Below, piece by piece: positions 5,880-51,019 of a stretch of DNA of 64,000 bases (the stretch's first letter is position 1; every line of letters starts with the position of its first letter). The stretch comes from Ylistrum balloti (Eukaryota). The DNA is taken from contig NW_026782889.1 in the NCBI RefSeq assembly GCF_031769215.1, forward strand, positions 1 to 64,000. Direction: 5' to 3'. The notes beneath the pieces were generated by a model. It saw nothing but the letters and a program-made list of their open reading frames with translations. It did no database searches and had not been told where the DNA came from. The position numbers and the translations under genes are program-made.

Positions 5880-6300
5880 GTGAGAATCTTTAAAACTCAA
5901 TATATCTCAATGTGAAGATCTCCCAACGAAAAGATTTCTCCATGTGAAAATCTCTCAAAGTAAAGACATATCCGAGTGGAAATCTTTAAGTAAAGGCCTT
6001 TTTCTGAGTGAGAATCTCTCATAGAAAATACCTATCCGATTGAAGATCTCTCAAAGTAAACATCTCTCTATGTGAAGATCTGTCAAATTTCAGACATTTC
6101 CAACTGCGAATCTCTCAGAGAAAAGATCTCTCCGAGCGAAGATCTCTCAAATGACAATCTCTCAAAAAAGAGATCTCTCAGAGTGAAGATCTTTAAACGT
6201 TAAGATCTCTCAAAGTAAAGATTTCTGAGAGTGAAGATCTCTCAAAGAAAAGAACTATCTGAGGGAAGATTTCTCAAAGTAAAGATATCTCGCGGGGTCG
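5880..6300. repeat. Degenerate 16/32-bp GAAGATCTCTCAAAGT-type repeats (seed of the 32-bp satellite), unit 1
   Basis: Repeated gaagatctctc and aaagtaaa motifs with high divergence. Confidence 0.8.
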
Positions 6301-7779: not shown

Positions 7780-8380
7780 ACGCAGATTTAGACATGATAG
7801 CGGATATGTTGACATGATATCAGAGATGTCGACATGATATCACTGATTTGATATGAAAACGGAGATTTTGATATGATATAAGAAATTCTGACATGATATC
7901 GGAGATGTTGAGATGACATAAGATATTTTGATATGGTAACGGCGATGTTGAGATGATATAAGATATTTTGACATGAAATCAGTGATGTTGACATGATGTC
8001 AGTGATTTTGACATGAAATCTGTGATGTTGACATGATATAAGAGATGTTGATATGATATCAGAGATGTTGATATGATAACGGAGATTTTGATGTTGACAT
8101 GATATAAGAGATGTTGATATGATATCAGAGATGTTGACATGATATCAGAGATTTTGACATGATATAAGAGATGTTGACATGATATCAGTGACTTTGACAT
8201 GATATCAGTGACTTTGACATGATATCAGTGATGTTGACATGATATCAGATATGTTGACATGATATCAGAGATGTTGACATGATATCAGAGACGTTGACAT
8301 GATATCAGAGATGTTGACATGATATCAGATATGTTGACATGATATCAGAGATTTTGACATGATATTTGAGGTTTCGACAT
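7780..8380. repeat. 20-bp tandem repeat GACATGATATCAGAGATGTT, unit 1
   Basis: The 20-bp period is directly visible. The array is diverged on the left and homogeneous at 8100-8360. A related ATAATAACAGAGATGTTTAC 20-mer lies at 8575-8650. Confidence 0.95.
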
Positions 8381-9231
8381 GATACCGGGGATTTTTAAAT
8401 GATAGCGGAGATTTTGACAAAGCCACAAATGTTTAAATAAAAATAGAAAATTTGATATGATCACACAAAGTTGACATGATAAAACTTCAGAGATTTCGAC
8501 ATTATAAGAAAGATATTTACATAATAAACAAAATGATGACATTACAAAAACATGTTTATGATAACAGAAAGGTAAATATAATAACAGAGATGTCTACATA
8601 ATAACAGAGAGGTTTACACAATAACAGAGAGGTTTACATAATAACAAATGTTGATATCATAATCAATATGTTAACATCATAACAAAGAATATGACAAGCT
8701 AATAAATGCAATGAAAAGTCCCAAGGTCTCTATTTGTTGTTATTGTTAGAAATAAGTTCTTCATTCTTTCAGAATATCTATTGAAAATGGCGACAGACTA
8801 TGTAACGATCGTATTTGATACTTAGTACCGGACGAGAAAGGCAATGGAACCAAGCGATGATATCGATATATTGTTACACCTGTTTTTTTTTCTATACAGA
8901 AGTGATACTAGTTCGATTGTTCATGAAAGACTCAGATTATAGGGGCATGCGAGTTGTTTCCCTTGTAACGATGAAATTTGTAACAATGTCCTTAGCATTA
9001 ACAGTTTGTTTTCAAACAAATAAAACTCTTATATCACCCAGACAATTTGTGGCAACAAAATTACACTCATGTTTCGAAATGTATAATGTTGTTTGAAAGA
9101 ATCCCAACTCTCGTCTTTTTCTATTACTTTTATGCCGATGAAAATTTGAGATTCACTCTTACTTTACACAATATTTTCCAAACATACGGCAAGAAACAAT
9201 GATTGGGTTTGTAAATTTACTTTCAGAGATA

Positions 9232-9251
9232 CAGTGAAACCTGTCTAATCC

Positions 9252-9316
<65 letters not shown>

Positions 9317-9728
9317 GACTTTTTGGTCGGATTAGGCAGGGTGTCGGAAAAATCAGGTATTGTTGTCGACTTCACTTTGTACACAAAAATATATGCTACC
9401 GCCGGTAGATACGTTAAGCATACTACTAATGTGCATACAAATACACGCTGGTGTTAAAAATAAAACAAAACAATTAAGTATTAATTTACTGACGTTTACA
9501 CATCTGTGGTGCGATGATGACTTACGTGTCGGATTTACCAGGTATAATTAACTAACAAAGATAGCCTGACGTCATAGAAATATGTGTCGGAATTAGGAAC
9601 TGACAGTGACCGGAAATATCAGTGTTTTAATACATTGACAAATAACGCAATTTTACGGGAATACGGTACAGTGTCAGATTTGACAGGATGTCGGAAAAGT
9701 CAGGTGTCGGATTAGACAGGTTTCACTG
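9232..9728. mobile_element. MITE with TIRs CAGTGAAACCTGTCTAATCCGA and a TA target duplication (Tc1/mariner-pogo type)
   Basis: 22-bp perfect TIRs, TA at 9230-9231 and 9729-9730, internal gtcgga subterminal repeats. Absent at the orthologous site in unit 2 (about 29200). Confidence 0.9.
9254..9315. repeat. 62-nt poly-G run inside the MITE
   Basis: Directly visible. May be a sequencing or assembly artefact. Confidence 0.9.
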
Positions 9729-12700
9729 TACTTGTGATATAGATTCCGGATTTCGGTTGTAAAATGCCAAGTTGTGATTTGACGCATTCCATTTAAAATG
9801 TGAATGATGTTTCTATACCAACGACATTCTCAACAACATGAGAATGTCTATTTATAACATTTACCGATTATATAATTATAACGGGGCTGCGATAACTCAT
9901 TCGCTTAGGAGGTTGACCTATGCAACCTATTCGCGTGTTTCGACACTCCCTACCCATGGTTGTTTGTTTCTGGGAAGATGAGAAATTATTTGGTCAGTGA
10001 CTATGTACGTATTTTTGCTGCACTTTGCTATGAAAACTATCAGCCTTCAAATGGTTGGAATCTAGAGGATGACCGGATCTCTGCTGCCAAAATAAAAGCT
10101 CCAACATCGTAATAACAGTGGTAATCTGGAGTGTTTCATGGAGTAAAATAAATGCAGATAGATGAAGTTGAAACCAGCTTTCAATCATTTTCAGGGAGAT
10201 TTGCACAGAATCTCACTAGGTTTTTGCCAGTTAAAATTAGTACGAAGCTTTATTATGGAGCATTTGAACGATGAAGTTGACTATAAGATCATGATTGATG
10301 GTTTTGTGTCAAACATTGCCAGAGTTCAAATTCAGTGTCCAAATACTTCTGTCAAGCTTGTGTTTGATTAGGTATGATTAAGAAGTAGTCAAATCTTAGT
10401 TCTGTCAGTGCCGCACTTTGTCCACAGTAATAAGTGCATATTTCCATTTGTCTTCTATATAGGGGCACCTAGCTTTTGGAGGACATACAGAAAAGGTATA
10501 AGGAGTAAGGAATTTCGGTACTTCATTCGGAAGATTGAAGATTCTTCTCGCATACTGGTCCTTTTAGATATTTCAGACACGGACAGTGATCCAGACCAAT
10601 AAACCTGTGTAGATAATAATCACAAGATAATTGGAAATATAATCTTCCAGACAAGTAAATATGCTAAATAGCTTAATAGATACCTTTTATTTAACTCGAT
10701 AGTTTACAGAAAATACTTGTTGACAGACCAACATGTATTCCATTCGATTTTTATAACTTAAAGAGCATCATCATGGTCAATCAAAGTTCTATCAAATTGT
10801 AGACATTTTTATAGTAAATGCAAACAGTGATAATCAATACTGATGTACCTGATAACGAATACTTGTCTAATCTGAGTGTTTATTAACATCACAGTTTTAA
10901 TTGAAATAATTGTAAATTCCATTTACATCTAGTATGGTTACAAAACTGACCATCACAAAAAACCCGTTATGTTTAATAAGATTATAGAATGCGTGATCAT
11001 TTGCATGTTATAAGTTTTGTAACTAAATGTCTTACAGAAGACAAACAAAGAGTTAGTTTTCACTCAATTGTTTTGTCTAAGGAGTAGGATTTGTCTTGGC
11101 AGTACAACACAAACAACCGTTGTTATGGAAAATAAGATGTTTCTATAAAGTTAAAAGAAAAAGCTGTTGATTAAAGATATATCATTGTTACACATTGTAG
11201 TGCGTTCTATTTCTATTTGATATCGATTACATTCTGATGAACAATTTTACAACTGCTTCATCCTTAAACATGGCTTACCATACTGATTTTGAAAATCCAA
11301 AGTTGAGCCAAATTCGACCCTTCTTTTTCTGTATATTGTGACCTCATGCTTTGACTGATTGAGAAGAAAGGGCATCAATGAAAATATTTTTGAAGTAGGT
11401 CAAAAATCCAATACGGCCGCAATGACGCCAAATGTCGAAAACGTAAAACCGGCATAACTAAAAAACAATTGAATGTATTTTATTTGATTTTTTTTTTATT
11501 TTACAAATGCTCAGAAAAAATTATTGATCGATTTGGGATGTCAATCCTATCCAATGGATGTGAATTCTTTATAACTTAGAGTGCACATTTTGCTATATCT
11601 TAGAATTAACTCCGGTCCCCAAACATTGTTATTTATTTGAAATGTACACCTTTAGCTCAGCGGCGATTCCACATCTGTGACGGCAGAAGTTAAACCTGTA
11701 TGGAGGTATCAAAACACGCATCCGGATGTTACATGTATCTTAATAAAGCCGTTAATCTAGTGATTATAAATAGTATACTTCTCATCACTTTCGTTACAGT
11801 ATTGAATATACGATTGAAATCGACTTGTACCGAGAAACGACATAAGTGTATTTAAAAAATAACATGAAAATTAAGTACATTGTATGTAGTATTTGTCACA
11901 TCAGCTGTCTCGTATAGTAGCATTAATTAACGGTATGAGGAAGAGGTAATTTTGTTATGTTCATGCTTTATGCAATCTAAAGATATTACGTTATGCATAT
12001 AACTTCAGCATATTACGGAAGGAGTATAGTCTGTTCAATTCCCGCATAAGTAAGGCAATTAATTCGATGATATTTTTTCCTGATCATACTTCCTGATTAC
12101 ATTCTTGTAACGTGGAAAATCTGAAGGAACATAATATACACCAATCTGCAAGTTCTTGTTACCCCTTACTGACCTACTGACACCCTTTTAATGCCATACG
12201 TTGACACTGGTATAAAGCCTTATTGTTGTGACAGCACGTGGCACAGTTATGTTTAGTGTTTGTACAGGTACACAATTTAACATCTATGTAGACTAAGATA
12301 GTAGATTGAGATTATTTGATTACTTAACGAAGGTAATAAATCATATACTGTGTATATTACACGTGTACGGAGAACAAAAGCTATTTTTCATATTCGTGTA
12401 GCTTAAATCATGTAGATACTTCATCTAACCCAACTTATCATTAATCAACAACAGTAGCAATCAACGTCGGAGATATTTTGAAAAAATAAAAAATGAAAAT
12501 GACAAATCATGAAGCCAGTTCATTAATAAACACAAATTCAGAAACCTGAAAGGGTTGTTTGTAACACGACCTTCAATTCATTAGTAATTCTTCATTGCCA
12601 TGAAAGTCAACAAACAATGCAACACAAATGACCGTATCAGAGATTGAACCAAATTTCCAACCCGAATGTCTAGAGTGTGGAGCTGATAGGTTAGTCATTT

Positions 12701-15589
12701 GAAGAAGAATCTTGACATCAACAGCTGTAGATTGTGGCCATATTTAATATTTGATATGAATAAGTAACATTTTTAATGTGAACATAAAAATGAATTTAAA
12801 TTATAATTGTTTTATGTTTGCACGATGTCTGCATGATGTGCGATGTTTGCAAGATGTCTGCTAAGATCTGCGATAGGAAAACTGGACGAAATAAGCCATC
12901 TCACATCTATTGCACAAATGTGGTTCGTTTACTGACAAACATTATATTACATTATGCATGTAAACATTACATGGACGTCTCTTTATGTCACAGTAATAAA
13001 TCATCTGAAATCTTTTACCGTCAGCAAGGAAACTTTATTTTCATTTCTTCTATATAACTCTCATTATTCAATCATATTGTAAACAAAAAATATCTGCTCA
13101 AGGAAATGTTAAGTGTTTTGTCTGTAAGCCAGGCGACCCAGTTTGTAAAGATCCAGACCTTTCACGTATGTACCCGTATACAGGTAAACGTTTGCTACCC
13201 GAGGCAACACTACTCACCACAGTCTGAGGTGTGAAACTATATACGATCAGACTAATAAATGCAGGTCAAGCGTTATTTAAAAAAAATGTCGAATTAAAAA
13301 ACCTGATTGATTGTATTGTGTGCGTGTGCGCGCATGATCTCCGGACTATGTGCGTAGGAAGTTTTGATACTATATGTATATTCATTTCTAAGTACATTTT
13401 AATTAAAAAAAAAACAAACAAAATGGCCACCATGAAGTCATATCCGTTTTTATCTAAATTGCTATAAACTTCATAACGACACGTCATGTTGAATTCAGCT
13501 GTAAAAATGTTTTGTAAAATAATAAAGAACAGAAAAACATATTTATTATTCAACTAGAACTTCCGATACATGGCATAGCCATTGTTGAAAATGCTAGATT
13601 GGATAATAATCTACAGAGTCTAGAGTCTTCATATTTGATATATAAGAAGATCAGTTATAGGCTATCAAGTTTATCAAAATAAATGTGATATTTGGTCAGA
13701 TGCATATTGAGACCAATGGTCATCGATAGTAATAAGGAAACGAATAGTACAATATCAACTTTGGTTAACATTCAGAAATGCAATTTTGAATAACAAAAAC
13801 TTCTCACGAACTACAGGATATGGTATTTGATAAGTAAAACGTCCATGTATTTGTGTATGAAACTTGATAACATGAATAATTTTCCTCCCCCCTGCCAAGT
13901 CACAAATCATGAAATGGATTCTTATCAATAACAAAGAGAAACAATGTGGCGTTATTTGTTCAGTTGCATACTGCGACCAATTGCTATCAACAATTGTACG
14001 AAAAACATTGTGCTTGGTCAACTTCAATTCTTCTATTTAGGTCAATATTCAAAAGTGTTTTTTATGTTATCAAATCTTGAAGAACTTCTCAAGATACTCA
14101 TTGTCTAAAATGTTAATATTTCACATGTTAGATGTCCAGGTCATTAGATATCAGGTTGACTAATATGAATGACTTTAATTTCAAGGTCACATGGATCAAG
14201 TTTGTAAAATCTCAATGGTTTATTTTCAATAACCAAAAGGTACAAGATGATGGTATTTGGTCAGTTGTATATTGCAATCAAATAATAATGATGGTTGTGA
14301 ACAAATAAAATGTCAAAGGTCAACTTCTGGTTTTCAGAAAGGGTCACATTAAGAATCGTTTAGCGCAAATCCATCATCTGAAATTGCACAGTCTAGAGTC
14401 TGGGTGTTATATAAATCACTTGAGTGGTTGGTCATCACGTTTGTGGAAATAATTCAACTTAGGGTAAGAGGTCGAATATAGGTGAAAACTGCGTCAAATT
14501 GTTGGCTCATCATTTCTAGTTGACTTTGAATTATGATGATGGCATGTTGGCATTTTCTTTTTATTTAGAATACATCAAGTGTTTATTCTCTGTTTTGTTT
14601 TTTAATCCGCTTTCTTACTTTTATAGGAAACTGTTGAATACTTGAATACATCATTCATTCATTTGATGTTCTAATTAATACCCCCAATTATTGTATCGTG
14701 CGTCACCGTGCCCTAATATACTGTTATTTATAAATACTTATTACAGCTTAACTCGGAATGATAATGCCATTGATAACTACCCTGATGACAATTGTTAAAA
14801 AAGGAAGTTTTGTAGAAAGTATTTAGCATAGAATGAGGGAATGATTCTTGCAGACATGTTGATCAAAGACACTCTAATTCAATGTTGATTTGTGTCACGG
14901 TTTTGTGTTTAGACTGTTGATCATTGAAACTAGTGGAATCGACATAAGGAAGAAATTCATCTTATGAATTGAAATAACATCTGTGTGTTGTCGAATATAT
15001 TATTACACAACAACACAGGAAGGATTTTAAACAGCGTGTTACGTTGTATTTTTGTAAGAATCAGTACAACATTTTTGGATGAAGGTTTGACTTGTTTTGC
15101 ATTTACGTCTAAACGATAGACAATCTTGACGTCATAAAAACGTGTGCATTAATGTTTAGCTTCTGGAACTACTCCCAAAAGTGATGAAAACATTTTTTTT
15201 CCAAATATTTTAAGAAAAACATGACAACAATTTGGTCCTTTAGATAGGTTTTAATGGTATAAAATTCTTGTCTAGGAAAGCGAATCATTATCTGGTTGAA
15301 ACAGATAAAAGCAAGTGTAAAAATCTTGTTTGGCAAACACAAATATCCTTTTGATCCCGTTATATCAATTTGAAAACTGACAGCTCAGGCGAGATACCCA
15401 ATAATTAACAAATTTGGAATAAACGATGACGAAAATTGATGATACTGATAATATCTAACATTATGAAATCATCAAATATTCTTTTTAATTAACATAGTTC
15501 GTTTATCAGTTGTCAAGACCTATCTTATTATCAATAATCTTTTGTACGGACAAAAGTCTTCACGGCTATCACACATGCACACGTGGTAA

Positions 15590-15732
15590 TCAACGTACTC
15601 TATGACGCTTCCTCCAAATTGCTGATGCCGTGTATAAGAAAGGGTTGATGGCGGCATTGACTGGCAGCACAAATACCATTACCCAGGCATAGGCATCATT
15701 CGGAATCTCGTATCCACTTTTTGACATCACAC
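15590..15732 (-). CDS. LGR type-C GPCR copy 1, exon 3 (end of TM6, TM7, short C-tail, stop)
   Basis: Acceptor ttttttcag at 15733-15735. The phase-1 join gives G-VMSKSGYEIPNDAYAWVMVFVLPVNAAINPFLYTASAIWRKRHRVR*, with the LPxNxxxNPxLYT TM7 motif of relaxin-receptor-type LGRs. TGA at 15592-15590. Confidence 0.9.
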
Positions 15733-16154
15733 CTGAAAAAATAGTATTGTTTGACACTTATCTTGAGTATTCATCCTACATTAGGACAACTGATGGTATA
15801 CATGGAATAGAAGTTTTATTATCAATTAATGATATTAATTATAGGTGGTAATTCCTTATCTAAGCATGAAATACTTTGTTTTCGTACTTGCGGAACCATC
15901 GTCTTCCACGACTTCCGCGAGTCACTCAAACACTTATATGACCATTTGTTTACGTGTGTTATTTCTGGTTACTTTATACAGATGCACTTTTGTCGGAATG
16001 TGTGTATATAACAATATATCTAAATTCTTTTAAAAGTGACCTGATGGTCGTCGTCAATGACGTTTGGTTTATTGCTGGAAAGAAACTCAATTGAGAACGT
16101 TATAATTCAAAGCTTTGTTCTACATTTCGTAATGCGATAAGATAAGTTATTTAC

Positions 16155-18011
16155 CCATGACTCCAATAGGAAACCAGCAGCAAAAGTCTGTCGCCACCAC
16201 CAAGAAGAGGGTTTTAGCTACCGTCAGGTCTCGTTGTCGAGTCTGTGATGAAGCTACCCGACCCCCACCACTTGTTACAAGGCTTTTAAACATGCAGAGT
16301 TGGCCTATGGCGATGATAACGAAAATGAAACTGTTCAGGCAAACAAACACTGCAAAAGAATAACCCGAACCAGGTTGTTCGTCACGTGTCAGTGGTAAGG
16401 CAAGACACACTCCTGACTGAGAATAATATTCTCCCTTGAAGTAGAATTGCATAGAAACAACAGGGATGACAGCGATTGTGATAGCAACCAACCACAGGAA
16501 AAATGAGATGATGCATGCTTGCTTCCCGGATATATTTCGCCGAGAAAGACGAGACATGGGAAATACTATGACAATTACTCTGTCTATTGTCACCATAAGA
16601 ATCAGAAACGTCGACATTTCACTAGATATATTCGACAGGATTCCAGCTATGGTACATACAATATTGTTTCTCCAATCCTGATCATTCCACGCATATACAT
16701 CTCGATAATGTATATCAAATGATCCTATAATCATGAGATAGATACTCATGAGAAAATCAGACATACTTAAATTCAATACAAAAATCGAATAACTTGTTGT
16801 AATATTATCTCTATCGATAAGAAGTCGGTAAAACATGACAGTAAAATTCCCAATTAAAGAGCAAAAGCCAATAATCCAGAGAAAAACTCTAAGTAAATCT
16901 GAACCTATCAAATTTTTACACGAGGATATCACATCTCCTTCTGATTTGCAGGCTGCTTCTTCAAACCAGCAATGCATTAATTTAGATGGATCCTTTAGAC
17001 ACTTATCGTCAGGAACCGACTTAGGTTTAACACAACACATAAAAGGAGTGTCTGTCAGCAAAACAGTCAGATTGTCTAAACCTTCAAACATGTGTTGCTT
17101 AACTTCCAGTTTGTTACCAATGATATTCAAAGTAGACAAATAACTAGAATTAGTGAATGTACCCGCAGGCAAAGTTGCAAAATTATTGTATGATATATCG
17201 AGCAATTCAATAGAAGCAGGTAGGATAGGTAGAACAGATAAGAAATTTCCGTTAATTGTGATTACTTTGATATTAAAAAAAACAGTGAACGAATAGTCAG
17301 AAAGGGACAGTATCCGATTGTTGTCGAGGAGCAGGTATATAAGGTATTGAAGCTCATTAAAAAGGTTATCAAGTAGAACTGATATCTGATTGTTCGATAA
17401 GTCCAAATACATAAGATCAGGGAGACCGCTAAACACAGAGTCTGGTAGAACTGATATCTGATTTCTAGATAAGTTCAAATACGCAAGATTAGTGAGACCG
17501 CTAAACACAGCGTCTGGTAGAACTGATATTTGATTGTTAGATAAGTCCAAATACCTAAGAAAAGGAAGACCGTAAAATGTATTTATCGATAACTGATTTA
17601 TCTTATTATTACATAACTCTAGATGTTCAATACCTGACATGTCGCTGAACATGCCTTCAGGAAGTAACATAATGCCGTTATTAGATAGATCTAATGACCT
17701 GAGGTTCTGTAAACCTTTGCTGAATGTTTTGTACACATTGTATTTATCTTTAATGACTAAATAACTGATCTTCGATAGTCCCAGAGATAGTAAATGATTC
17801 CACATGGTATTGGAAGGGAAGTGTATAGTCGCCAAGAAAGGGTCGCTTAAGTTGACTGTGAGACCAATACACATACAAATTGGTTGGCACGGATGGACAC
17901 ATGCAGACTCGTCATCGGAATCTGGACATTGGATTTTATTGTCACATACTTGTTGTAGAGGAATGGTGTGTCCGTTAGGGCAGTGATGTATTCCTGCACA
18001 ATTGAATAGTC
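16155..18011 (-). CDS. LGR type-C GPCR copy 1, exon 2 (most of LDLa, LRRNT, about 10 LRRs, hinge, TM1-TM6)
   Basis: ORF track 16147..17874 shows LxxLxLxxN repeats, hinge TDTPFMCC...SSCKNLI, TIDRVIVIVFP and TDFCCWFP. The frame extends upstream to acceptor tttcag (18014-18012) and adds GLFNCAGIHHCPNGHTIPLQQVCDNKIQCPDSDDESAC (LDLa). Donor G|gtaaat at 16155/16154. Confidence 0.93.
17375..17590 (-). repeat. 72-bp LRR-encoding tandem repeat inside copy 1 exon 2
   Basis: Three near-identical 24-codon units containing ...gtagaactgatat(c/t)tgatt...gataagt(c/t)caaatac... Confidence 0.85.
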
Positions 18012-19959
18012 CTGAAACAAGGACGATTTAATGTACTTGCATACAAAATCAATAATCGACGACGATACCGATGATCTGTTGGAAATATACAACAAAGTAT
18101 AAACCCTTTACACTACAGACATATACTTAATATCAAGAAAGTTTGATATTCAACCTAGTAAGCAGTACGTCTTCATTAGCAATAGTATGCGTCAATTACT
18201 GTATTTAGTGAGAAGGCAACTGATAATGTACACATGACGTCATGTTTGTCTATTTTTAGACGTCTGATTATTTTCATGTTAATGAAATTGAAAGAAATCG
18301 AAATATTTTAGAGTATGATTTATGTTTTCACAGTGAAATAATCATCTCTCACACCTACCACAGTTGTTGTTTTCTGTTTCCTGTTTCTGGCATCGAATGT
18401 CACATTTGTAGCTGACGTGCTGACAGAACGTATAAGGACACTTGACCTTCTCAGTAAAGCTATGTCCTTCTCTTCCTAATGTAAAGATGTGAAATGAAGT
18501 TATTGTACTCGATGATTTAACAGGAATAAAACTCTGATTTCACGTAAATTAATGTCGAATGAAAGAATTAAAACGAAGAATCATCAATCTAATAAGAATC
18601 GATAATCGATCAAAAATCTGCGATGATCGATGCCTTTCACAAATAGTACGTTTATATAGAGACATGTTTGTTTATAACTTCTGAGATATATTCCCACGCT
18701 CAGGATTCTTGGTGCGAGTAGCATTGAAACGCCGAATAAATATCGTGATTCATCTTCCTCTACTCGAAGTAAATTTTAGGACGTGTCTACTTGAGGTTTT
18801 GACATAATCTAAAATGTTGGCAACGTATAAGCACGATCATTTTGTGGACGGAGTGATATAGTTTTACTATCGCATTCAATTGATCAATCAAGCGTTTTAT
18901 TCCATATCGAATTATTAGGAAGTAAATATTGCTAATGTTTTTCTTCATATTCAATAATAACAATGTCGTTTTGTAATGTTCTTGTTTTAAAAGGAGAAAA
19001 CGAGTTTCTTTTTCTTTTTGATATACTTTTTTATTTTCATCTTTACAAACATTCGTGATACTAATTGAAAAAAAAATATATATATGAAAGCGTACAATTT
19101 TTTTAGAGTGAAGTCACTTATTGCTCTTATATAAACACAATTAAAGGACAAAGAACATGATTTCCCAACTAATATGACGTAATGATAGTTGTAAATCACG
19201 AGACTCCACCCCTCACTACACCTACGTGACTGACCAACGAGATACGCCAACCAATAACTGATTCTTCTTAATATGCATTTTGAGTGGACGATAACGAGGC
19301 TGATTGACTTGCTACCTTACTGGTGCTCTCCTGTCGATATTCGGCCACTATAATGCTAGTACATAAAGTCATGGATCTGAAAAAAAAAATCTTGTTCTAT
19401 TCAAATTTCTTCAAATATTCAATAGATTTTTCATTCATTACTAAATCATTAAGATTGATTTTTTGATATTTGTAAATAAAAATATTAAAAAGCTTAAGGA
19501 TAAAACTACAGGTGTAAAATAGCGGTTTACACAGACCATGTTAACGAAAGAATTTTTTTTAATCATCTTATCCCAGCAAACAATAATGCACAGAATAGTT
19601 TATAGTAAATGTTGTCAACAGTTCAGAGTGTATTGATCGGTTGGTGTATTTGACTTAGCAGATGTGCCGTAAATGCGGAACGTGCAGATAAAGAGTTTTC
19701 TACTGCAAAAAGTCAACACCAATGGTCATATATAATATTTACCGTATTATTATTATAAGAAAAGGAAAACTATTTTCAGTTCCCCCATTTCTGTGAATGT
19801 TTTAAAATTTCAGGTAACTAACATAGAATGTGAACAAATTACAAAGAGACTTATGAAAAAGTGAAAGGAGATTAAGACCAAGTGTTACGGAAGAGTAAAT
19901 GTCTTCTGCTTAATCGACGTCTTCCGTCATGTAAACCTATGTCAATCCAAGTAAGTAAT

Positions 19960-20345
19960 GTCACATTCTCAAATGATAGCGATTTATACAACCACGGAAC
20001 CAACAGGAAAAATTAAAAGCTCCACAACAACAAAAGAGATCGTAGTTTTTTCGATTGGGTCACAATGTGGATCATAAACCTTCTCCGTAGTTTTCATCAA
20101 TCTGCATCTTTTAAAAACCCTGTGTTACGAGATTGTCCGTCCGTTGAAGACGTCTTGATCAAAGCAAAAAGCAAAAACGTGATAATTGGATCATGCCTTT
20201 GAATATTGAATTAACTGTGACATGTAAATACCATGGGTTGGGGATGCAGGTACAGTGCTATCCAGAAATAGAAAGTTCACAATAGTGAAATTCAAATCAT
20301 TAAGCATACAGCTTGGTGAAGTCTTCAAATGTATGAACATATCAA
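19960..20345 (-). mobile_element. Penelope-like RT relic in LGR copy 1 intron 1
   Basis: Reads NDLNFTIVNFLFLDSTVPASPTHGIYMSQLIQYSKA*SNY..., resembling the DDFNFxIVNFPFLxSNIPxxPAYGVYISQLIRYxRAC motif recalled for molluscan PLE RTs. Contains stops and frameshifts. Confidence 0.55.
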
Positions 20346-22560
20346 AGATACATAAATACCTATCTCCACTTGAAAGATTCGTATTGACAACTTCTGTGGA
20401 AGCTATTGTCACATGCCAATGCCTCTCCACGATGTCCGTCGTTTTATCGATCTACTTTTGTAAACAACTACCTTTACCATTCAGAGAAAGACGTTAAGAA
20501 TTTCAGGTATTGCACGAATAATCAATATACTCTAATATTTAGACAGATTATCCATGCAGTGTAGCCTACATCCTGACCCGCATCTATTAAACACTAGAAT
20601 GGAAAGTAGGCGGAGCCTCTACGTCATCAATGGTTGAAGGGAGCGATTTGATTGACTAAACACGTGTGAGGGACCGTTTCGAACAGAAATACAAAGATAA
20701 TTAAAACAAGAATTCGCATGACATTGCATAATCAACAGCCCGGTGACAAAATCAGGGTATTAGCTATATTCACCCGATAACATTCTGTTAGAACAAAAAA
20801 GACGATAAGTTAATAAAAATGTCAACGCTCAACAATATTCATTATGACACTTTCCTGTGTATATGGAGTGTGTTTAATATGTCAATTTTGACAATACAGT
20901 TGACGTCATCAATCCATGAATAAAGTCAACATTTTTTCTGTTCCTTATGTTCTTGTCACGAGTATAATTTATTATGAAAAACACAAATTATAAAAAGTCA
21001 GGCGGCTCTCTTTTTTTTATCATTCCAAGTATCGAATCATATGTTGCCAAGCAGAGACAGTTGAAATCATGTCATGGTTTAGTTTTATACTGAAGCATCT
21101 TTCTCACCTTTTGAAAACAACCTTTTTGGTGACTATGCGGTTTTGAGATCCTAATATCAAAGTGAAAATCTGGGCAATTCTCTGTTATTCCAACATAATT
21201 TTATTTAAAAAAGGATTTGTTGTAAAAATTATAGGCACGGCAATTACGTAAATGTGATTTTATGCAGAAGCATTATTCGTTAAAGTATGTTTTCTTTTGA
21301 ACATATTCGGACACCTGTATCTAAAAACAATCAAAGCTTAAATAAATGAAAAAGTGGAATAGTTCTCCTCAATTTTAAAGTTACATTTTAAAACTTTTTT
21401 TTTTCAAAATGCTACCAAGAACAAAATGCGAAAATTTACTTAGAAGTTTCAACCCCCAGGGACCGTATTCTTGAAGGATTTGAAGAAATTTCAGTAAGAT
21501 ATTGCGTTATTTAATATTTCAAATTTATTCTTTTCTCCTTAAAGTGGTATTTATAGCAATTGAAAGAAAGTGTAGTTGAATCTAGATTTCACGCGTGAGC
21601 ATGAGAATATTTTCATCTATCCTGGCCCTAACTTTGATGTAATTTGAAATTTATGATACAATAGAATTTAATCCTTTCTCGTGTTGGCTAATTAAACCGT
21701 ACAAAATATATATTGTGTTTCTTCTTTTCCGCTGATCTCATCAACATCTGTATCCATTGTTCAACACTAAACAATCCAGCAAAATAACGAATAGAAAAAC
21801 ATATTATTTTTCATACATTTAAAGCAGGTATCAAATTAACGACATAAAAATGCATATACTACAATACTGTTCAATATGATTCTAGAATGTAATGCACGAG
21901 TATATATGTGTTAAAGTATCGTGAGCACGACTGCTAGATAAAATTGCACATTTTGTGCAGTTTAGTAAATATAGTTGACTAGTATAACGGAATAAACATT
22001 TAACGGAAGACATGTGTAGTTATAACAAAATAACGATCACACGAATATTACAACTAATTGGTTATAAACACAACACATAAGATTTACCTAGTATTTAGTA
22101 TATTATTTTGTTTACAATAATATAGAAGTAATGAAAATAAAATGACCTTTGTAGCGGTAAGAGATTCATTGCCGAGACAAAAGGAGATGTCCATTTAATG
22201 TTTACATATATCATGTATATATAATGAGTGTCCTTACACTAAAGCTGGTCCAGTTTTTCTGCATCGTGCGCAAATCGCACATCTTGTTACGTTGTGTGAT
22301 ACCACAACTGTATAAGTGCACTTTAGAAATAATACTTTTATAATACCAACATATAGAAATGTCACTTTACATTAGTCTGTGTGATAAGTGAACTGATTGG
22401 CTGAACCAGCAGTTCTAAAGCCATATATAGCTCATACAATTACCTGGTTCTTTGTAATACTAGTTTCACTTATAAATTGATGCCGTATATACTTAAATAG
22501 CCATGAGATAATTGTTCACCTTTCTTTAGGATACCATCGCTTAACCTTTGATAATATTAC

Positions 22561-22798
22561 CTTTTGTACATTCCTGTGCTGGCAGTGGCTCCGTCTGGTC
22601 TACAGAACGTTTTCTTCTGATGTTTTCGATGGCGTCAGCATGTGTCGAAAGTCTTTCATCAAACATTTTATTCTTTCCATGGCTGAGGTCCCGAACAAAA
22701 TTCTGCCTCTCGCCTAAGTGTTTCATTGAGTATGCGCCATGGTTTAATGCACAAATGATTGCAATAAAATATGGCACCAAAAGCTTGAAAACGTTCAT
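22561..22798 (-). CDS. LGR type-C GPCR copy 1, exon 1 (signal peptide, pro-region with RRKR, first LDLa Cys)
   Basis: MNVFKLLVPYFIAIICALNHGAYS is signal-peptide-like. Donor aaag|gtaata at 22561/22560 is phase 1 and matches the exon 2 acceptor. The join completes a six-Cys LDLa (ECTKGLFNC...). Total CDS is 238+1857+143=2238 nt. The splice join is inferred, with no transcript evidence. Confidence 0.8.
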
Positions 22799-23094
22799 AG
22801 TGAAGTACTCTTAATCATAAATGTAGCCTTGATGGAGTTAAATGAGTTAAAACAGTTTATGCTAAAACGCATGTAAACATGTAACAGACGAAGATATCAG
22901 CGTCCTGTATAGGGTACCATTGCAATGGTCACGTACTGTTAGCAACGTCCCGGGCGTTTGCTTTTAAACATATCAATGATTAATATCTAAGCATATTCGC
23001 CAGAAATGATGAATATTAATTTGGTTCATTTGACATATTAAAGCCATTAGCTTATTTTGATAAAAATATATAATCTGTCTACAAAGCAATTGGA

Positions 23095-23225
23095 TGGTTT
23101 GAAGCGCGCAGATTGTCCTATTGTTGGTGGAAACTGGAGTACCTGCGGAAGACCCACGTGGACGAGCAGGTCATCATATACAATTTTCACGTCCGCTCTG
23201 GGATAATCGAACATGTTAATAAGGA
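23095..23225 (-). mobile_element. Degenerate tRNA-derived SINE-like fragment (paralogue at 49965-50095)
   Basis: ggtggaaac(t/c)ggagtacctgcggaagacccac resembles a common invertebrate SINE core. The minus strand has a B-box-like GTTCGATT. Confidence 0.45.
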
Positions 23226-23953
23226 CACATATCAATAGGTAATCAAAGCTTATTTCATAAGGAATGTAAAAAGATTAGTTGAAAAAAAAAATAAATAAAG
23301 ATAATAATAATGATGTGCTGTTATTTACCTTAACAAGGTAACAAAGTACTTGATAAAAAAACGTCTATCAAGAATGATAAGTAAGAAAAGTGATAGGACA
23401 GATGAAAATTATAAAACCATACGTCAGTCATTACGTAAAAGGGTAAAACAGGCGTAAGTGCTCGTTTCATTACATTCCAGTTCAGTTGTTGTCGGGACTT
23501 ATGTTTCCAACATACACTTGTAATGACGATACTTGCACAATGCGTGCACAATAGAATAATTGGACGAAATTTGTTATAACATAGAGTACATGTTAGTCCG
23601 CACAGTGTGGCGACCTATCATACATCTTGTTGAAATAGATTAAGAAATGACCTGTGAACACTCGTGGTGTAGGGTTTATCTATTTTCGTGGTATATAAGA
23701 GTAAAACTATGTATATATTCCTAAGCCATATATCTATAGGTTAGACACATGTAGATCTATCACGTAAATACTAGTTATATACACTCGTATTTAAGAATAG
23801 TTTGTTTACACGTGACCAGTCTTAGTATACTGTCATGCATATCGTATAAGCATTATCAATGTTAGCACTACATGAACGTCTATTTTCGTTTCGGAAATTA
23901 ATAATCCAAAATCCCATATGTCAGATAGGAAATTTTTATTTTCATTACTCTCA

Positions 23954-24200
23954 TTTTTATATACCCGTCGAAAGACGGACGTATTATGGTATGGCGCTGT
24001 CCGTCCGTCCGTCTGGCGTCTGTCGTAAACTTTTATTTGTCCGGAGATCTCCTCCTCAATTTTTCAGCCGATCTTTATGAAACTTGGTAGGCTTAATCAC
24101 CATATGAAGTTGTGTTTTCCTGACCGGGGTGATTTGAACAAGAGTTATGGTCCTTTGTTTATTTCCTTATAGAAATCTTGTCCGGAGAAGATCTCCTCTG
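23954..24200 (+). mobile_element. Helentron-associated non-autonomous element (HINE/DINE-1/pearl-like), partial
   Basis: Starts in a T-run (tttttatatacccgtc), with hairpin CCGTC-GAAA-GACGG, a (GTCC)n microsatellite and then the core tcagccgatctttatgaaacttggtagg. Confidence 0.65.
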
Positions 24201-25606
24201 TTAACTCATGTAAGAAATAAGGTTCGTTCATGAGATTTAAACTGATGATATTGCCGATGTCAATTGTTCTTATACATTTGTAGATATAAGTTAAATAAAT
24301 TCGAGACAAACTTGCACTGTTTCCTAATCTCTATTCATATTCAATATTGTTGCTCATGGCAAGGTTCCAATCAGAAAAAAAATCTAACAGATTAATTTTC
24401 GATTCGTTAGCGTTTCTGGTCATAACCATCTGGTTGTGGACTTAATAACTTAATGTTACAATGTATAATTTATGAACTTATAGGAGACATAGGAATCAGA
24501 ATACTGTCAAATAGACACTTTGTTATAAGATACCACGTTGTTAGACAAACTTGTGTTACGTTTACGAAATGTCAAAATATCTTGTTTTCTAAAATAAATA
24601 GAAAGAAATTATCTAGTGATTAATCATATCGAATAGTCCAGTTGTCTGAAACCTTTCATGTGTTGTGATTCGATATCAAACGATAGAAGAGGGCTTGTAA
24701 AATGTTGTTTGAAATATAAGTTAAATGATATATTAACACAGACGTATTCCATATTGGAGTCGATTGCTGACGGTGATGACAGCTACCTGCTCTGAACGTT
24801 TTACTCTGCTGTCAGAAAGTTTTTCTTTTCATGCTCATTTGTTTGAAGTACGTGGCATCGTTTTCACATACTTTACAATAAAATGCCATTCCGATCTGTG
24901 CATTTAATGTAAACCTCCGTTTGCATCTATAGTTATTTCGTCACCCATACAGATATTTCTGCTTAACGCCATCTAACAGTATTATATCAATAATCAAACA
25001 TTAATTGATGATCATTTTGTTCCACCCATAAACGAAGTGATAATTTTGAATCGCGAACACAATGTACACACGGAACCAACAGGCAAACTAATGAGCAACA
25101 AACATGTATAGTTTCATATTTGATGAAGAAGAAGAAAAAATCTCAATGCGATCACTATGAATATCTTAAAACTTCACCGTAATTTTCATCAACCTGCATC
25201 TATTGAATTTCTGTGTTTTGAGTTTTGTCGTCAGTTGACGATTTCTTGCTCGCAAATTGTGATCATGGAAATAAGCATTTAAATCTTTTTGTTTTCTGAT
25301 GGTATACAATTTTAGTGGATTCATTGCCGAAGAGAAAACAACCTCCATTTATTGTTCACATATAATATATATAATGATTATCTATACACTATGACTGGTC
25401 ACACTTGACGCTTTGTATACAAACTACAGTTATTGTTGAGTGTATATATATATTCTGTACCTATTACATATCTATGTTTCTGAACTATGATTTTATGGCT
25501 TTATTAAACTTATCTGTATTCCAGAAAAAATGCATGATTTACATAGTTCTTTTCAAGAGATAACAATCAGAAAATGATAGAAATCCAAATACAAGATGGC
25601 TGATTG

Positions 25607-26040
25607 AAGATCTCTCTAAGTAAAGATCTCTCAATGTGAAGATTTCTCATAGAAAATATCTTTTAGAGTGATTATTTCTCATAGTAAAGATCTCTTAGAG
25701 TGAAGATCTCTCAAAGTGAAGACATATCCGAGTGAAGATATCTCAAAGTGAACACCTCTCCAAATGAGAATCTCTCAAAATAAAGATATCTCAGAGTGAA
25801 TATCTTTCAAAGTAGAGATTTCTCTAAGTATAGATCTATCCCAGTGAAGAGCTCTCAAAGTAAAGGCATATGTGAGTGAGAATGTCTCCAAGTAAAGACG
25901 TATCAATGTGAAGATTTGTCAGAGAAAAGATTTCTCTGATTGAAGATCTCTCAAAGTAAAGATTTCTCAGTGTGGAGATCTCTCAAAATAGAGATTTCTC
26001 AGTTTGAATATCTTTTAAAGTAAAGATATCTCGCGCGGTC
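25607..26040. repeat. Degenerate 16/32-bp repeats, unit 2
   Basis: Orthologous to 5880-6300, with a clearer 32-bp period. Confidence 0.8.
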
Positions 26041-33320: not shown

Positions 33321-33329
33321 CTTCTCTTT

Positions 33330-42912: not shown

Positions 42913-43055
42913 TCAACGTACTCTATGACGCTTCCTCCAAATTGCTGATGCCGTGTATAAGAAAGGGTTGATGGCGGCATTGACTGGCAGCACAAATACC
43001 ATTACCCAGGCATAGGCATCATTCGGAATCTCGTATCCACTTTTTGACATCACAC
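42913..43055 (-). CDS. LGR type-C GPCR copy 2, exon 3
   Basis: Same sequence as 15590-15732. Acceptor cag at 43058-43056, TGA at 42915-42913. Confidence 0.9.
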
Positions 43056-43477: not shown

Positions 43478-45343
43478 CCATGACTCCAATAGGAAACCAG
43501 CAGCAAAAGTCTGTCGCCACCACCAAGAAGAGGGTTTTAGCTACCGTCAGGTCTCGTTGTCGAGTCTGTGATGAAGCTACCCGACCCCCACCACTTGTTA
43601 CAAGGCTTTTAAACATGCAGAGTTGGCCTATGGCGATGATAACGAAAATGAAACTGTTCAGGCAAACAAACACTGCAAAAGAATAACCCGAACCAGGTTG
43701 TTCGTCACGTGTCAGTGGTAAGGCAAGACACACTCCTGACTGAGAATAATATTCTCCCTTGAAGTAGAATTGCATAGAAACAACAGGGATGACAGCGATT
43801 GTGATAGCAACCAACCACAGGAAAAATGAGATGATGCATGCTTGCTTCCCGGATATATTTCGCCGAGAAAGACGAGACATAGGAAATACTATGACAATTA
43901 CTCTGTCTATTGTCACCATAAGAATCAGAAACGTCGACATTTCACTAGATATATTCGACAGGATTCCAGCTATGGTACATACAATATTGTTTCTCCAATC
44001 CTGATCATTCCACGCATATACATCTCGATAATGTATATCAAATGATCCTATAATCATGAGATAGATACTCATGAGAAAATCAGACATACTTAAATTCAAT
44101 ACAAAAATCGAATAACTTGTTGTAATATTATCTCTATCGATAAGAAGTCGGTAAAACATGACAGTAAAATTCCCAATTAAAGAGCAAAAGCCAATAATCC
44201 AGAGAAAAACTCTAAGTAAATCTGAACCTATCAAATTTTTACACGAGGATATCACATCTCCTTCTGATTTGCAGGCTGCTTCTTCAAACCAGCAATGCAT
44301 TAATTTAGATGGATCCTTTAGACACTTATCGTCAGGAACCGACTTAGGTTTAACACAACACATAAAAGGAGTGTCTGTCAGCAAAACAGTCAGATTGTCT
44401 AAACCTTCAAACATGTGTTGCTTAACTTCCAGTTTGTTACCAATGATATTCAAAGTATATAAAATACTAGAATTAGTGAATGTACCCGCAGGCAAAGTTG
44501 CAAAATTATTGTATGATATATCGAGCATTTCAACAGAAGGAGGTAACATAGGTAGAACAGATAAGAAATTTCCGTTAAGTATAATTATCCTTATATTAAA
44601 AAAACCAGTAAATGAATAGTCAGAAAGGGACAGTATCCGATCGTTTCCGAGGGACAGGTACATAAGGTATTGAAGCTCATTAAACAGGTTATCAAGTAGA
44701 ACTGATATCTGATTGTTAGATAAGTCCAAATACATAAGATCAGGGAGACCGCTAAACACAGAGTCTGGTAGAACTGATATCTGATTTCTAGATAAGTCCA
44801 AATGTTCAAGAACAGGGAGACCACTAAACACAGAATCAGGTAGAACTGATATATGATTACTAGATAAGTTCAAATACACAAGATCAGTGAGACCATGAAA
44901 TGTATCTATTGATAACTGATTTATCTTATTATATGATAAATCTAGATGTACAATACTTGGCATGTCACCGAACATGCCTTCAGGAAGTAACACAATGCCG
45001 TTATTAGATAGATTTAATGACCTGAGGCTTTGTAAACCTTTGCTGAATGTTTTGTACACATTGTATTTATCTTTAATGACTAAATAAGTAATCTTCGATA
45101 GTTGTTGTAATTCCGGAGATAGTAAATGGTTCCACGTGGTTTTGGAAGGGAAGCGTGCAGTCGCCAAGAAAGGGTCGCTGAAGTTGACTGTGAGACCAAT
45201 ACACATACAAATTGGTTGGCACGGATGGACACATGCAGACTCGTCATCGGAATCTGGACATTGGATTTTATTGTCACATACTTGTTGTAGAGGAATGGTG
45301 TGTCCGTTAGGGCAGTGATGTATTCCTGCACAATTGTATAGTC
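43478..45343 (-). CDS. LGR type-C GPCR copy 2, exon 2 (LDLa, LRRs, hinge, TM1-TM6)
   Basis: ORF track 43470..45206, extended to acceptor tttcag at 45346-45344, which gives GLYNCAGIHHCPNG... Donor G|gtaaat at 43478. Confidence 0.93.
44698..44915 (-). repeat. 72-bp LRR-encoding tandem repeat inside copy 2 exon 2
   Basis: Same 72-bp period as in copy 1. Confidence 0.85.
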
Positions 45344-49436: not shown

Positions 49437-49665
49437 CTTTTGTACATTCCTGTGCTGACAGTGGCTCCGTCTGGACGACAGAACATTTTCTTTTGATGTT
49501 TTCGATGGCATCAGCAAGTCTTTCATCAAACATTTTATTCTTTCCTTGGTTGAGGTCACGAACAAAATTCTGCCTCTCGCCTAAGTGTTTCATTGAGTAT
49601 GCGCCATGGTTTAATTCACAAATGATTGCAATAAAATATGGCACCAAAAGCTTGAAAACGTTCAT
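49437..49665 (-). CDS. LGR type-C GPCR copy 2, exon 1
   Basis: Paralogous to 22561-22798, with a 9-nt in-frame deletion (STH) and RRKR changed to KRKC. Donor aaag|gtaata at 49437/49436. Total CDS is 229+1866+143=2238 nt. Confidence 0.8.
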
Positions 49666-51010: not shown

Positions 51011-51019
51011 TTTTAATTA

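What the first reader, a model, noticed from the sequence alone, without database searches (positions are those of the whole stretch)
17375..17590. LRR modules appear reordered between paralogues, suggesting 72-bp cassette shuffling
Copy 1 has the order LPFLRYLDLSNN / LTNLAYLNLSRN / LPDLMYLDLSNN. Copy 2 (44698-44915) has LTDLVYLNLSSN / LPVLEHLDLSRN / LPDLMYLDLSNN. The LT..YLNL type is second in copy 1 and first in copy 2, while the repeat count is unchanged. The units are near-identical 72-bp DNA repeats with no intervening intron. Inference: out-of-register conversion or unequal exchange between LRR units generates new binding surfaces, loosely analogous in outcome to VLR cassette assembly but probably in the germline.
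Basis: partly seen in the sequence, partly recalled or inferred. Interest (0 to 1): 0.7.

Follow-up and report, generated by a model that had tools for sequence, protein, structure and literature searches.

The report
Scallop LRR-GPCR repeats: no cassette swap
Two neighbouring scallop receptor genes (GRL101-like LRR-GPCRs) carry three 72-bp leucine-rich-repeat units each; the apparent "reordering" rests on two or three single-base changes and is not shown. The wider gene family does gain and lose such units and patches them by ordinary germline gene conversion.

Summary
The quoted peptides, coordinates, 72-bp period and equal unit count are all correct. They lie on the minus strand, in the large exon 2 of two tandem GRL101-like LRR-GPCR genes of the scallop Ylistrum balloti. 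The claimed swap of whole cassettes is not supported. Only 5 of 72 sites tell in-register from crossed pairing (3 against 2; 21 against 17 mismatches). AU tests do not reject positional homology (p 0.27 and 0.19). Synonymous or rare markers (CTT1, AGA11, CAA/CAG13, AAT3) favour in-register homology. The "LT..YLNL type" comes down to two codons (P/T at codon 2, D/N at codon 8) that switch repeatedly across the family.

At least 10 paralogues carry 2 to 8 central units, and some units look like hybrids. A 185-bp tract (about 17243-17427) is the main block of difference between copy 1 and an otherwise about 99.9% identical 11-kb repeat on contig C560. There, C560 matches a third paralogue (C693) at 184 of 185 bases. 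The hinge/7TM half of copies 1 and 2 is homogenised (dS 0.005), while the LRR half is not (dS 0.14). I found no orphan cassettes and no sign of VLR-like assembly. This is a known kind of evolution (as in plant R-gene clusters) in a new family.

The parts
16155..18011 (-). Copy 1, exon 2: one LDLa module, about 10 LRRs, Cys-rich hinge, TM1-TM5
   Evidence: ORF; Pfam LRR_8 1.8e-47 and 7tm_1 1e-20; Ldl_recept_a 24.3 bits against a cut-off of 24.1; splice sites read
22561..22798 (-). Copy 1, exon 1: signal peptide and pro-region ending in RRKR
   Evidence: tblastn with the N-terminus of P0001; donor site read
15590..15732 (-). Copy 1, exon 3: TM6-TM7 and C-terminus, stop TGA at 15590-15592
   Evidence: tblastn with the C-terminus of P0002, 100%; acceptor and stop read
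17497..17568 (-). Copy 1 central unit u1 (L4), LPFLRYLDLSNNQISVLPDAVFSG
   Evidence: nearest non-self unit is C693_u1 (7/72; 3/33 in the 5' part); shared L3/u1 junction with C693
17425..17496 (-). Copy 1 central unit u2 (L5), LTNLAYLNLSRNQISVLPDSVFSG. Codons 2-8 resemble first units of other paralogues; codons 9-24 are identical to copy 2 u2
17353..17424 (-). Copy 1 central unit u3 (L6), LPDLMYLDLSNNQISVLLDNLFNE. Hybrid-looking: central-type 5' part, terminal 'NE'-type 3' part
   Evidence: 2/72 mismatches to copy 2 u3; nt 1-57 nearest to C693_u1, nt 58-72 nearest to terminal units
17243..17427 (-). Gene-conversion tract. Copy 1 and the otherwise about 99.9% identical C560b repeat differ by 39 substitutions within this stretch, and C560b equals paralogue C693 (1 mismatch)
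13119..17130 (-). Stretch homogenised between copy 1 and copy 2 (hinge, 7TM, intron 2, exon 3, 3' flank), about 99% identical; its boundary falls at the end of the LRR array
   Evidence: dS 0.005 here against 0.14 in the LRR part
43478..45343 (-). Copy 2, exon 2 (same architecture as copy 1)
44820..44891 (-). Copy 2 central unit u1, LTDLVYLNLSSNHISVLPDSVFSG
   Evidence: 3/72 mismatches to C644_u1
44748..44819 (-). Copy 2 central unit u2, LPVLEHLDLSRNQISVLPDSVFSG
44676..44747 (-). Copy 2 central unit u3, LPDLMYLDLSNNQISVLLDNLFNE
49437..49665 (-). Copy 2, exon 1 (KRKC in place of RRKR); ends set by analogy with copy 1
42913..43055 (-). Copy 2, exon 3; ends set by analogy with copy 1
12923..24130 (.). 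Segmental duplication unit of copy 1, paired with 40239-51011 (93-94% overall)
   Evidence: self-BLAST

Best explanation
The two stretches are the central LRR units of exon 2 of two tandem paralogues of a GRL101-like / type-C LGR receptor of Ylistrum balloti. The architecture is signal peptide, pro-region, one LDLa, about 10 LRRs, hinge and rhodopsin-type 7TM. The three central units of the two copies are most likely positional (in-register) counterparts. They have diverged about as much as the adjacent intron, with amino-acid replacements concentrated at the variable x positions of LxxLxxLxLxxN. The impression of a swap comes from two single-base switches: CCT/ACT at codon 2 (P/T) and GAC/AAC at codon 8 (D/N; N8 creates an N-L-S sequon). 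These recur at many units and positions in the family. A short out-of-register micro-conversion of at most about 30 nt into copy 1's u2 cannot be excluded. Separately, the family does evolve by germline unequal exchange between 72-bp units (gain, loss, hybrid units) and by gene conversion between paralogues. Conversion has homogenised the 7TM half of copies 1 and 2 and has written a 185-bp patch of another paralogue into the LRR array of a near-identical repeat. Shown: architecture, divergence profile, unit counts, mosaic tracts. Inferred: the recombination mechanisms, the direction of transfer, and any adaptive value.
For: Architecture and identity. Divergence profile: 1 mismatch in about 1000 bp of hinge/7TM, about 8-15% in the LRR part, and about 5-15% per 200-bp window in the upstream intron. 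dS is 0.14 in the LRR part and 0.005 in the 7TM part. Omega is 1.08 at x positions and 0.24 at scaffold positions. L2, L3, u3 and L7 pair with their positional counterparts (6, 11, 2 and 9 mismatches, against at least 32 to any non-homologous unit type; u3 is 14-20 from u1/u2, which are the same repeat type). Only 3 against 2 sites discriminate crossed from in-register pairing for u1/u2, and AU p is 0.27 and 0.19. In-register markers: CTT1, the TAC-GGT junction and CAA13 link cp1_u1 to C693_u1. AGA11 is found only in cp1_u2, C560b_u2 and cp2_u2. AAT3 is shared by cp1_u2 with the u2-u4 units of C560a and with C693_u2. ACT2 occurs in 10 units and AAC8 in 9 units, at several array positions. Family dynamics: 2, 3, 5, 8 and 7-8 central units per paralogue; a conversion tract with 39 substitutions within about 300 bp inside about 10 kb that is otherwise about 0.1% divergent, where C560b matches C693; and discordant similarity matrices for the N-terminal LRR part and the 7TM part.
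Against: The unit tree does place cp1_u2 with the first units of copy 2, C644 and C560a (82/78 and 89/79). In its first 33 nt cp1_u2 has 3 mismatches to cp2_u1 against 7 to cp2_u2. All 7 differences from cp2_u2 fall in the first 24 nt and none in the next 48. That clustering is also what a short conversion tract would leave. With 72 columns no test has much power, so a failure to reject is weak evidence.
Confidence: 0.62

Rival explanations
1. Short out-of-register micro-conversion. A tract of about 19-30 nt (codons 2-8/10) from an LT-type first unit of a paralogue such as copy 2 or C644 was copied into the second unit of copy 1. This makes a chimeric unit without moving any whole cassette.
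For: cp1_u2 matches cp2_u1 and C644_u1 at 30/33 in its 5' part, and cp2_u2 at 48/48 over its last 48 nt (39/39 in the 3'-part window). In the triplet cp1_u2 / cp2_u1 / cp2_u2, five sites favour u1, then five favour u2, with no interleaving (read; about 2/252 by chance, but the triplet was chosen after seeing the data). The LT clade has 82/78 support. Conversion is demonstrably active in this array.
Against: The five 3' sites are mostly changes private to cp2_u1, so they are not evidence of shared ancestry with cp2_u2. AAT3 and GCG5 of cp1_u2 match in-register u2 units (C560a_u2, C693_u2) as well as they match u1 units. In the donor the sequence upstream of u1 is L3, which differs at 36-37 of 72 bases, so there is little homology to start an out-of-register heteroduplex. 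AU tests are not significant.
Confidence: 0.25
2. True unit-level rearrangement. Copy 1 gained an LP unit ahead of the LT unit and lost one unit by unequal crossover between the LT and LPVLE units (or the two cassettes were exchanged), keeping the count at three.
For: cp1_u2 looks like the 5' part of cp2_u1 joined to the 3' part of cp2_u2, which is the product expected of a one-unit deletion. Unit number clearly changes in this family. Crossed pairing saves 4 mismatches.
Against: It needs two compensating events. cp1_u1 is joined to L3 exactly as C693_u1 is, so it is an ordinary first unit and not an insertion. cp1_u1 is not close to cp2_u2 (10/72 overall; 8/33 in the 5' part by my count from the sequences), so it is no reciprocal swap. 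The positional clades are not rejected.
Confidence: 0.08
3. Somatic, VLR-like cassette assembly or somatic conversion of the LRR array in immune cells.
For: Only the loose resemblance of tandem LRR units that differ between copies. Frameshifted paralogues exist that could serve as donors.
Against: Both germline genes are complete open reading frames with intact arrays. No orphan LRR cassettes occur anywhere in the 64-kb window. All the variation seen is between germline assembly copies. No somatic data could be examined.
Confidence: 0.02

Closest known systems
GRL101 of Lymnaea stagnalis and GRL101-like / relaxin-receptor-like (type C) LGRs of molluscs, including the 12-gene GRL101-like cluster at SudRes2 in Biomphalaria sudanica (PMC12297450)
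   Same: An LDLa module, an LRR array and a rhodopsin-type 7TM. Tandem clusters of mutually paralogous genes, with gene presence/absence and truncation differences between haplotypes. NCBI names the nearest proteins GRL101-like or relaxin receptor 1/2-like.
   Different: There is a single LDLa and no C-type lectin domain. From what I read of that paper, LRR-unit gain/loss and conversion tracts within the array are not described there.
Plant LRR resistance-gene clusters (NLR and receptor-like protein loci), which evolve by unequal crossing-over and gene conversion within LRR arrays (established knowledge; reviews such as PMC3645687 and PMC3017797 appeared but were not read)
   Same: Tandem paralogues, variable LRR number, mosaic tracts between paralogues, and replacements concentrated at solvent-exposed x residues.
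   Different: This is an animal GPCR, and its ligand and its role (immune, chemosensory or endocrine) are unknown. Omega at x positions is about 1, not clearly above 1.
Lamprey/hagfish VLR assembly
   Same: Only that LRR modules are the variable element.
   Different: VLR genes are incomplete in the germline and are completed somatically from flanking cassettes. Here the genes are complete, no flanking cassettes exist, and all the variation is germline.

Membership tests
Type C LGR / GRL101-like GPCR | Rhodopsin-family 7TM domain | tested here: met
   PF00001 7tm_1, E 1e-20 in both copies; TM6-7 lie in exon 3
Type C LGR / GRL101-like GPCR | Extracellular array of leucine-rich repeats before a Cys-rich hinge | tested here: met
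   PF13855 LRR_8, E 1.8e-47 and 7.6e-43; about 10 units read
Type C LGR / GRL101-like GPCR | N-terminal LDL-receptor class A module(s) | tested here: met
   PF00057 scores 24.3 bits against a cut-off of 24.1, E 3.6e-5, for copy 1. This is marginal, and there is one module only
Type C LGR / GRL101-like GPCR | Closest named relatives are GRL101 / relaxin-receptor-like proteins | tested here: met
   The top hits are GRL101-like and relaxin receptor 1/2-like proteins of scallops
Type C LGR / GRL101-like GPCR | Activation by a peptide or protein ligand through the ectodomain | not testable with these tools
   No ligand data are available
VLR-like somatic LRR cassette assembly | Germline gene incomplete, lacking most LRR-coding sequence | tested here: not met
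   Both copies have intact ORFs through the whole array
VLR-like somatic LRR cassette assembly | Banks of promoter-less LRR cassettes flanking the gene | tested here: not met
   A consensus scan of both strands of the window finds only the six in-gene units
VLR-like somatic LRR cassette assembly | Somatic sequence diversity between cells | not testable with these tools
R-gene-like germline LRR diversification (unequal exchange plus gene conversion) | LRR unit number varies among paralogues | tested here: met
   2 (C171), 3 (cp1, cp2, C560b), 5 (C560a, C693), 8 (C644, C493) and 7-8 (C129a/b) central units
R-gene-like germline LRR diversification (unequal exchange plus gene conversion) | Discrete mosaic tracts shared between paralogues | tested here: met
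   A 185-bp tract where C560b equals C693, inside a repeat about 99.9% identical to copy 1; a 4-kb homogenised 7TM tract; discordant identity matrices
R-gene-like germline LRR diversification (unequal exchange plus gene conversion) | Positive selection at solvent-exposed LRR residues | tested here: inconclusive
   Omega is 1.08 at x positions and 0.24 at scaffold positions, from one pairwise comparison of 42 codons
R-gene-like germline LRR diversification (unequal exchange plus gene conversion) | Out-of-register exchange that reorders or hybridises units | tested here: inconclusive
   LT clade at 82/78, but AU p is 0.19-0.27. Hybrid-looking u3, by a small margin of 4 against 5-7 mismatches

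The most novel reading that the evidence does not exclude
The GRL101-like cluster of this scallop may evolve under an R-gene-like regime. In that reading, conversion keeps the signalling (7TM) half uniform, while the LRR half is held apart and is re-patterned by unit gain/loss and by conversion from diverged, partly frameshifted paralogues that act as a donor reservoir. This would suit a recognition receptor (non-self or chemosensory) more than a hormone receptor.
Probability: 0.3. Interest if true: 0.5.

Novelty: new member of a known kind. Interest (0 to 1): 0.27.

Why it matters
GRL101-like LGR clusters are turning up as candidate recognition or resistance loci in molluscs, for example SudRes2 in Biomphalaria (PMC12297450). 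This work shows that the LRR ectodomain of such a cluster changes by unit number and by conversion patches while the 7TM half is kept uniform. That gives a concrete, testable picture of how ligand specificity could diversify. It also warns that the automatic gene models at this locus are unreliable. It does not reveal a new diversification mechanism.

Tried and rejected
1. Whole-cassette swap. I tested it with unit distances, nearest-unit tables split into 5' and 3' parts, an ML unit tree, AU tests of positional and crossed clades and a column bootstrap. It is not significant either way, and the synonymous and rare markers favour in-register homology.

2. C560b as a simple allele of copy 1. 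I rejected this as unproven. C1032 positions 1-838 match C560:167675-168559 at 100%. C1032 starts 146 bp before the 11-kb repeat begins, and C560 ends about where it ends. The contigs therefore probably break at a near-identical repeat, and the array has at least 3 genes. Whether C560b is an allele or a paralogue stays open.

3. Elevated divergence of the LRR part taken as evidence of hypermutation. Rejected: the LRR part diverges no more than the adjacent intron, and it is the 7TM half that is unusually identical.

I have no data on individuals, tissues or read support for the patch.

5. C693_u1 as a clear out-of-register copy of u3. This is only suggestive: 4 mismatches in nt 1-57, against 5-7 for the next-nearest units.

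6. The scan's earlier notes held nothing on LRR shuffling.

Full report
**What is there**

The coordinates fall on the minus strand, inside a long open reading frame that occurs twice in the window: 16147-18027 and 43470-45359. Each frame encodes:
- one LDL-receptor class A module (PF00057, 24.3 bits against a cut-off of 24.1);
- about ten leucine-rich repeats (LRR_8, E 1.8e-47 and 7.6e-43);
- a Cys-rich hinge;
- TM1-TM5 of a rhodopsin-type receptor (7tm_1, E 1e-20).

Splice sites and tblastn with annotated relatives give a three-exon gene. Copy 1 has exon 1 at 22561-22798 (signal peptide and a pro-region ending in RRKR), exon 2 at 16155-18011 and exon 3 at 15590-15732. Copy 2 has the corresponding exons at about 49437-49665, 43478-45343 and 42913-43055.

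The nearest database proteins are "G-protein coupled receptor GRL101-like" and "relaxin receptor 1/2-like" of scallops. The best hits come from Ylistrum balloti, on contigs whose lengths equal those of this assembly. So the window carries two tandem paralogues of a type-C LGR (GRL101-like) of that scallop. They lie 27.3 kb apart inside an 11-kb segmental duplication (12923-24130 against 40239-51011, 93-94% identity).

**Check of the observation**

- TRF reports period 72, 2.8 copies and 84% matches, without indels, at 17373-17576 and 44691-44895.
- The units lie in one exon, and both copies have three "central" units (u1-u3, equal to LRR 4-6).
- "Near-identical" is too strong: the units differ at 7-20 of 72 bases.

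**Is the order really changed?**

Mismatches per 72 bases between the central units:

| Pair | Mismatches |
|---|---|
| cp1_u1 / cp2_u1 | 14 |
| cp1_u1 / cp2_u2 | 10 |
| cp1_u2 / cp2_u1 | 7 |
| cp1_u2 / cp2_u2 | 7 |
| cp1_u3 / cp2_u3 | 2 |

In-register pairing of u1 and u2 costs 21 mismatches and crossed pairing costs 17. Only five columns discriminate: nt 4, 8 and 22 favour crossed, and nt 33 and 39 favour in-register. A column bootstrap prefers crossed pairing in 83% of resamples.

To add power I took every paralogue of the genome and cut out all central units, 50 in total from ten loci. An ML tree of the 29 units of the seven closest loci places cp1_u2 (with its twin C560b_u2) beside cp2_u1, C644_u1 and C560a_u1. 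Support is 89/79 and 82/78, which is moderate and below the tool's threshold for strong support. AU tests do not reject the positional alternatives: {cp1_u2, C560b_u2, cp2_u2} has p 0.27, and "all first units together" has p 0.19.

Site by site, the signals split as follows.

In-register signals:
- cp1_u1 is joined to L3 by TAC-GGT-CTT-CCT, exactly as the first unit of C693 is. It also shares the synonymous CAA13 with C693_u1 and C560a_u1. It is therefore an ordinary first unit of LP type, and LP at position 1 is not peculiar to copy 1.
- cp1_u2 is identical to cp2_u2 from codon 9 to codon 24. This includes AGA11 (Arg), a state found in only three of the 50 units: cp1_u2, its twin C560b_u2 and cp2_u2.
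- cp1_u2's AAT3 is the state of the u2-u4 units of C560a and of C693_u2.

Crossed signals:
- What links cp1_u2 to first units is ACT2 (Thr), AAC8 (Asn) and a G-G at codon 5.
- ACT2 occurs in 10 units and AAC8 in 9 units, at array positions 1, 2, 3, 5, 7 and last. The D/N switch is also seen in L2 and L3 of other copies.

So the "LT..YLNL type" is defined by two single-base changes that recur across the family. N8 also creates an N-L-S sequon in the beta-strand of the repeat (read directly from the sequence; whether it is glycosylated is inferred).

My reading is that the three units are positional counterparts. A short out-of-register micro-conversion (about 19-30 nt, codons 2 to 8/10) into cp1_u2 remains possible. 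A swap or shift of whole 72-bp cassettes is unlikely.

**Divergence profile**

Between the two copies the LDLa part and the hinge/7TM part are almost identical. There is 1 mismatch in about 1000 bp of hinge/7TM, and the near-identity runs on through intron 2 and exon 3 to about 13119. The LRR part (17137-17850) differs at about 8-15% per 60-bp window, and the intron upstream at about 5-15% per 200-bp window.

Nei-Gojobori estimates:

| Region | dS | dN | omega |
|---|---|---|---|
| LRR part | 0.14 | 0.092 | 0.64 |
| Hinge/7TM | 0.005 | about 0 | - |
| x positions of L2-L7 | - | - | 1.08 |
| Scaffold positions of L2-L7 | - | - | 0.24 |

The LRR part is therefore not hypervariable relative to neutral DNA. 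It is the 3' half of the gene that has been homogenised by a recent conversion of about 4 kb, whose boundary falls at the end of the LRR array.

Identity matrices over ten paralogues disagree between the two halves. In the N-terminal LRR part, copy 1 is the outlier (90-93% to cp2, C644, C560a and C693, which are 94-97% to each other). In the 7TM part, cp1, C560b and cp2 are 99.9-100% identical and C644 is 98.3%. This is a mosaic history.

**Family-level evidence for unit gain/loss and conversion**

Central units per paralogue:

| Paralogue | Central units | Note |
|---|---|---|
| C171 | 2 | |
| cp1, cp2, C560b | 3 | |
| C560a | 5 | has lost L7-L8 |
| C693 | 5 | |
| C644 | 8 | six nearly identical IPVLEYLDLSNN units in a row |
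| C493 | 8 | |
| C129a/b | 7-8 | |

The u3 unit of copies 1 and 2 looks like a hybrid. Its nt 1-57 are nearest to a central-type unit (C693_u1, 4-5 mismatches, against 5-7 for the next-nearest units). Its nt 58-72 are of the terminal "NE" type. That is the form expected from an unequal crossover that removes units, but the margin is small.

C560:168705-179919 matches C1032:23958-12756 over 11.2 kb. Divergence is about 0.1% everywhere except three places: a 5' block (23072-23958), one 9-bp indel, and 39 substitutions within about 300 bp (17231-17530). Within about 17243-17427, C560b has one mismatch to paralogue C693, while C693 differs from C560b on both flanks. This is a discrete conversion tract of about 185 bp covering u3, L7 and part of L8. 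Because the tract in C560b is almost identical to C693, C560b is probably the recipient (inferred). In the assembly, C693, C644 and C493 carry frameshifts or stops in the array, so they may be pseudogene donors or may contain assembly errors.

**Allele or paralogue?**

C1032 positions 1-838 match C560:167675-168559 at 100%. C1032 begins 146 bp short of the start of the 11-kb repeat, and C560 ends about where it ends. The contigs seem to break at a near-identical repeat, and the array has at least three genes per haplotype. I cannot say whether C560b is the allele of copy 1 or its downstream neighbour. The conversion tract is real in either case, unless it is a polishing artefact.

**VLR analogy**

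Both genes are complete. A scan of both strands of the window with the unit consensus (up to 28 of 72 mismatches allowed) finds only the six in-gene units. Nothing here points to somatic assembly.

**Comparison with what is known**

Tandem clusters of GRL101-like LGRs with structural differences between haplotypes are described in Biomphalaria sudanica (SudRes2, 12 genes; PMC12297450). Those genes carry an extra C-type lectin domain, and the passages I read do not treat LRR-unit dynamics. Change of LRR number by unequal crossing-over, and mosaic conversion between clustered paralogues, is textbook for plant resistance loci (established knowledge; relevant reviews were listed but not read). The present case is a new member of that known kind, in an animal GPCR family.

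**Verdict**

- Cassette reordering is not shown: about 8% for whole units, about 25% for a short out-of-register micro-conversion.
- Germline unit gain/loss and conversion in this family are well supported.
- There is no VLR-like system.

Interest is modest.

Noticed in passing
window 13119-17130 against about 40435-44455: The hinge/7TM half of exon 2, intron 2, exon 3 and the 3' flank are about 99-100% identical between the two copies, while the LRR half and intron 1 are 8-11% divergent. The switch falls at the end of the LRR array. This is concerted evolution of the signalling half only.
   Followed up: yes
window 15590-22798 and 42913-49665; C560 (P0121): The NCBI models of copy 1 (XP_060084314.1, 504 aa), copy 2 (XP_060084315.1, 503 aa) and C560b (XP_060078035.1, 607 aa) are truncated. 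Two of them read the LDLa region in the wrong frame, and all three skip parts of the LRR array; copy 1's model lacks exactly 48 codons, which is two units. Only the C560a model (XP_060078034.1, 747 aa) matches the long ORF. These are probably annotation artefacts at repeats, and they need RNA-seq to settle.
   Followed up: partly
window 1-838; C560:167675-168559 and the C560 end at 180087: C1032 starts 146 bp before, and C560 ends about at the end of, an 11-kb repeat that is about 99.9% identical between them. Spacer A (837-13515) lies downstream of copy 1 in C1032 but upstream of C560b in C560. The assembly seems to break at the repeat, and the array has at least 3 genes.
   Followed up: partly
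window 22561-22798 against 49437-49665: The pro-region ends in RRKR in copy 1 and C560a, but reads KRKC in copy 2, which also has a 3-residue deletion upstream.
   Followed up: partly
L005 (C644), L006 (C693), L009/L010 (C493): These paralogues have frameshifts (unit spacings of 70 or 71 nt instead of 72) or stop codons inside the LRR array. They are pseudogenes or carry assembly indels. C693 is the apparent donor of the 185-bp tract.
   Followed up: partly
window 51583-54317, 58977-61113, 61746-64000, 27046-28665, 7723-8419, 5880-6291, 25602-26032: Several long tandem-repeat (satellite-like) arrays appear in the self-comparison, with offsets of about 32, 62, 86 and 20 bp. Some are shared between the spacers of the gene array.
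   Followed up: no
window 30330-40240: The spacer between copy 2 and spacer B is absent from C560. It matches many dispersed loci in the genome at 83-93% identity, so it looks like transposon insertions that account for the 27-kb against 25-kb gene spacing.
   Followed up: no
units (for example 17473-17475 and 44868-44870): D/N switching at LRR position 8 creates or removes an N-L-S sequon in the repeat beta-strand, and it recurs in many units and paralogues. This could be on/off variation of glycan sites on the binding face.
   Followed up: no
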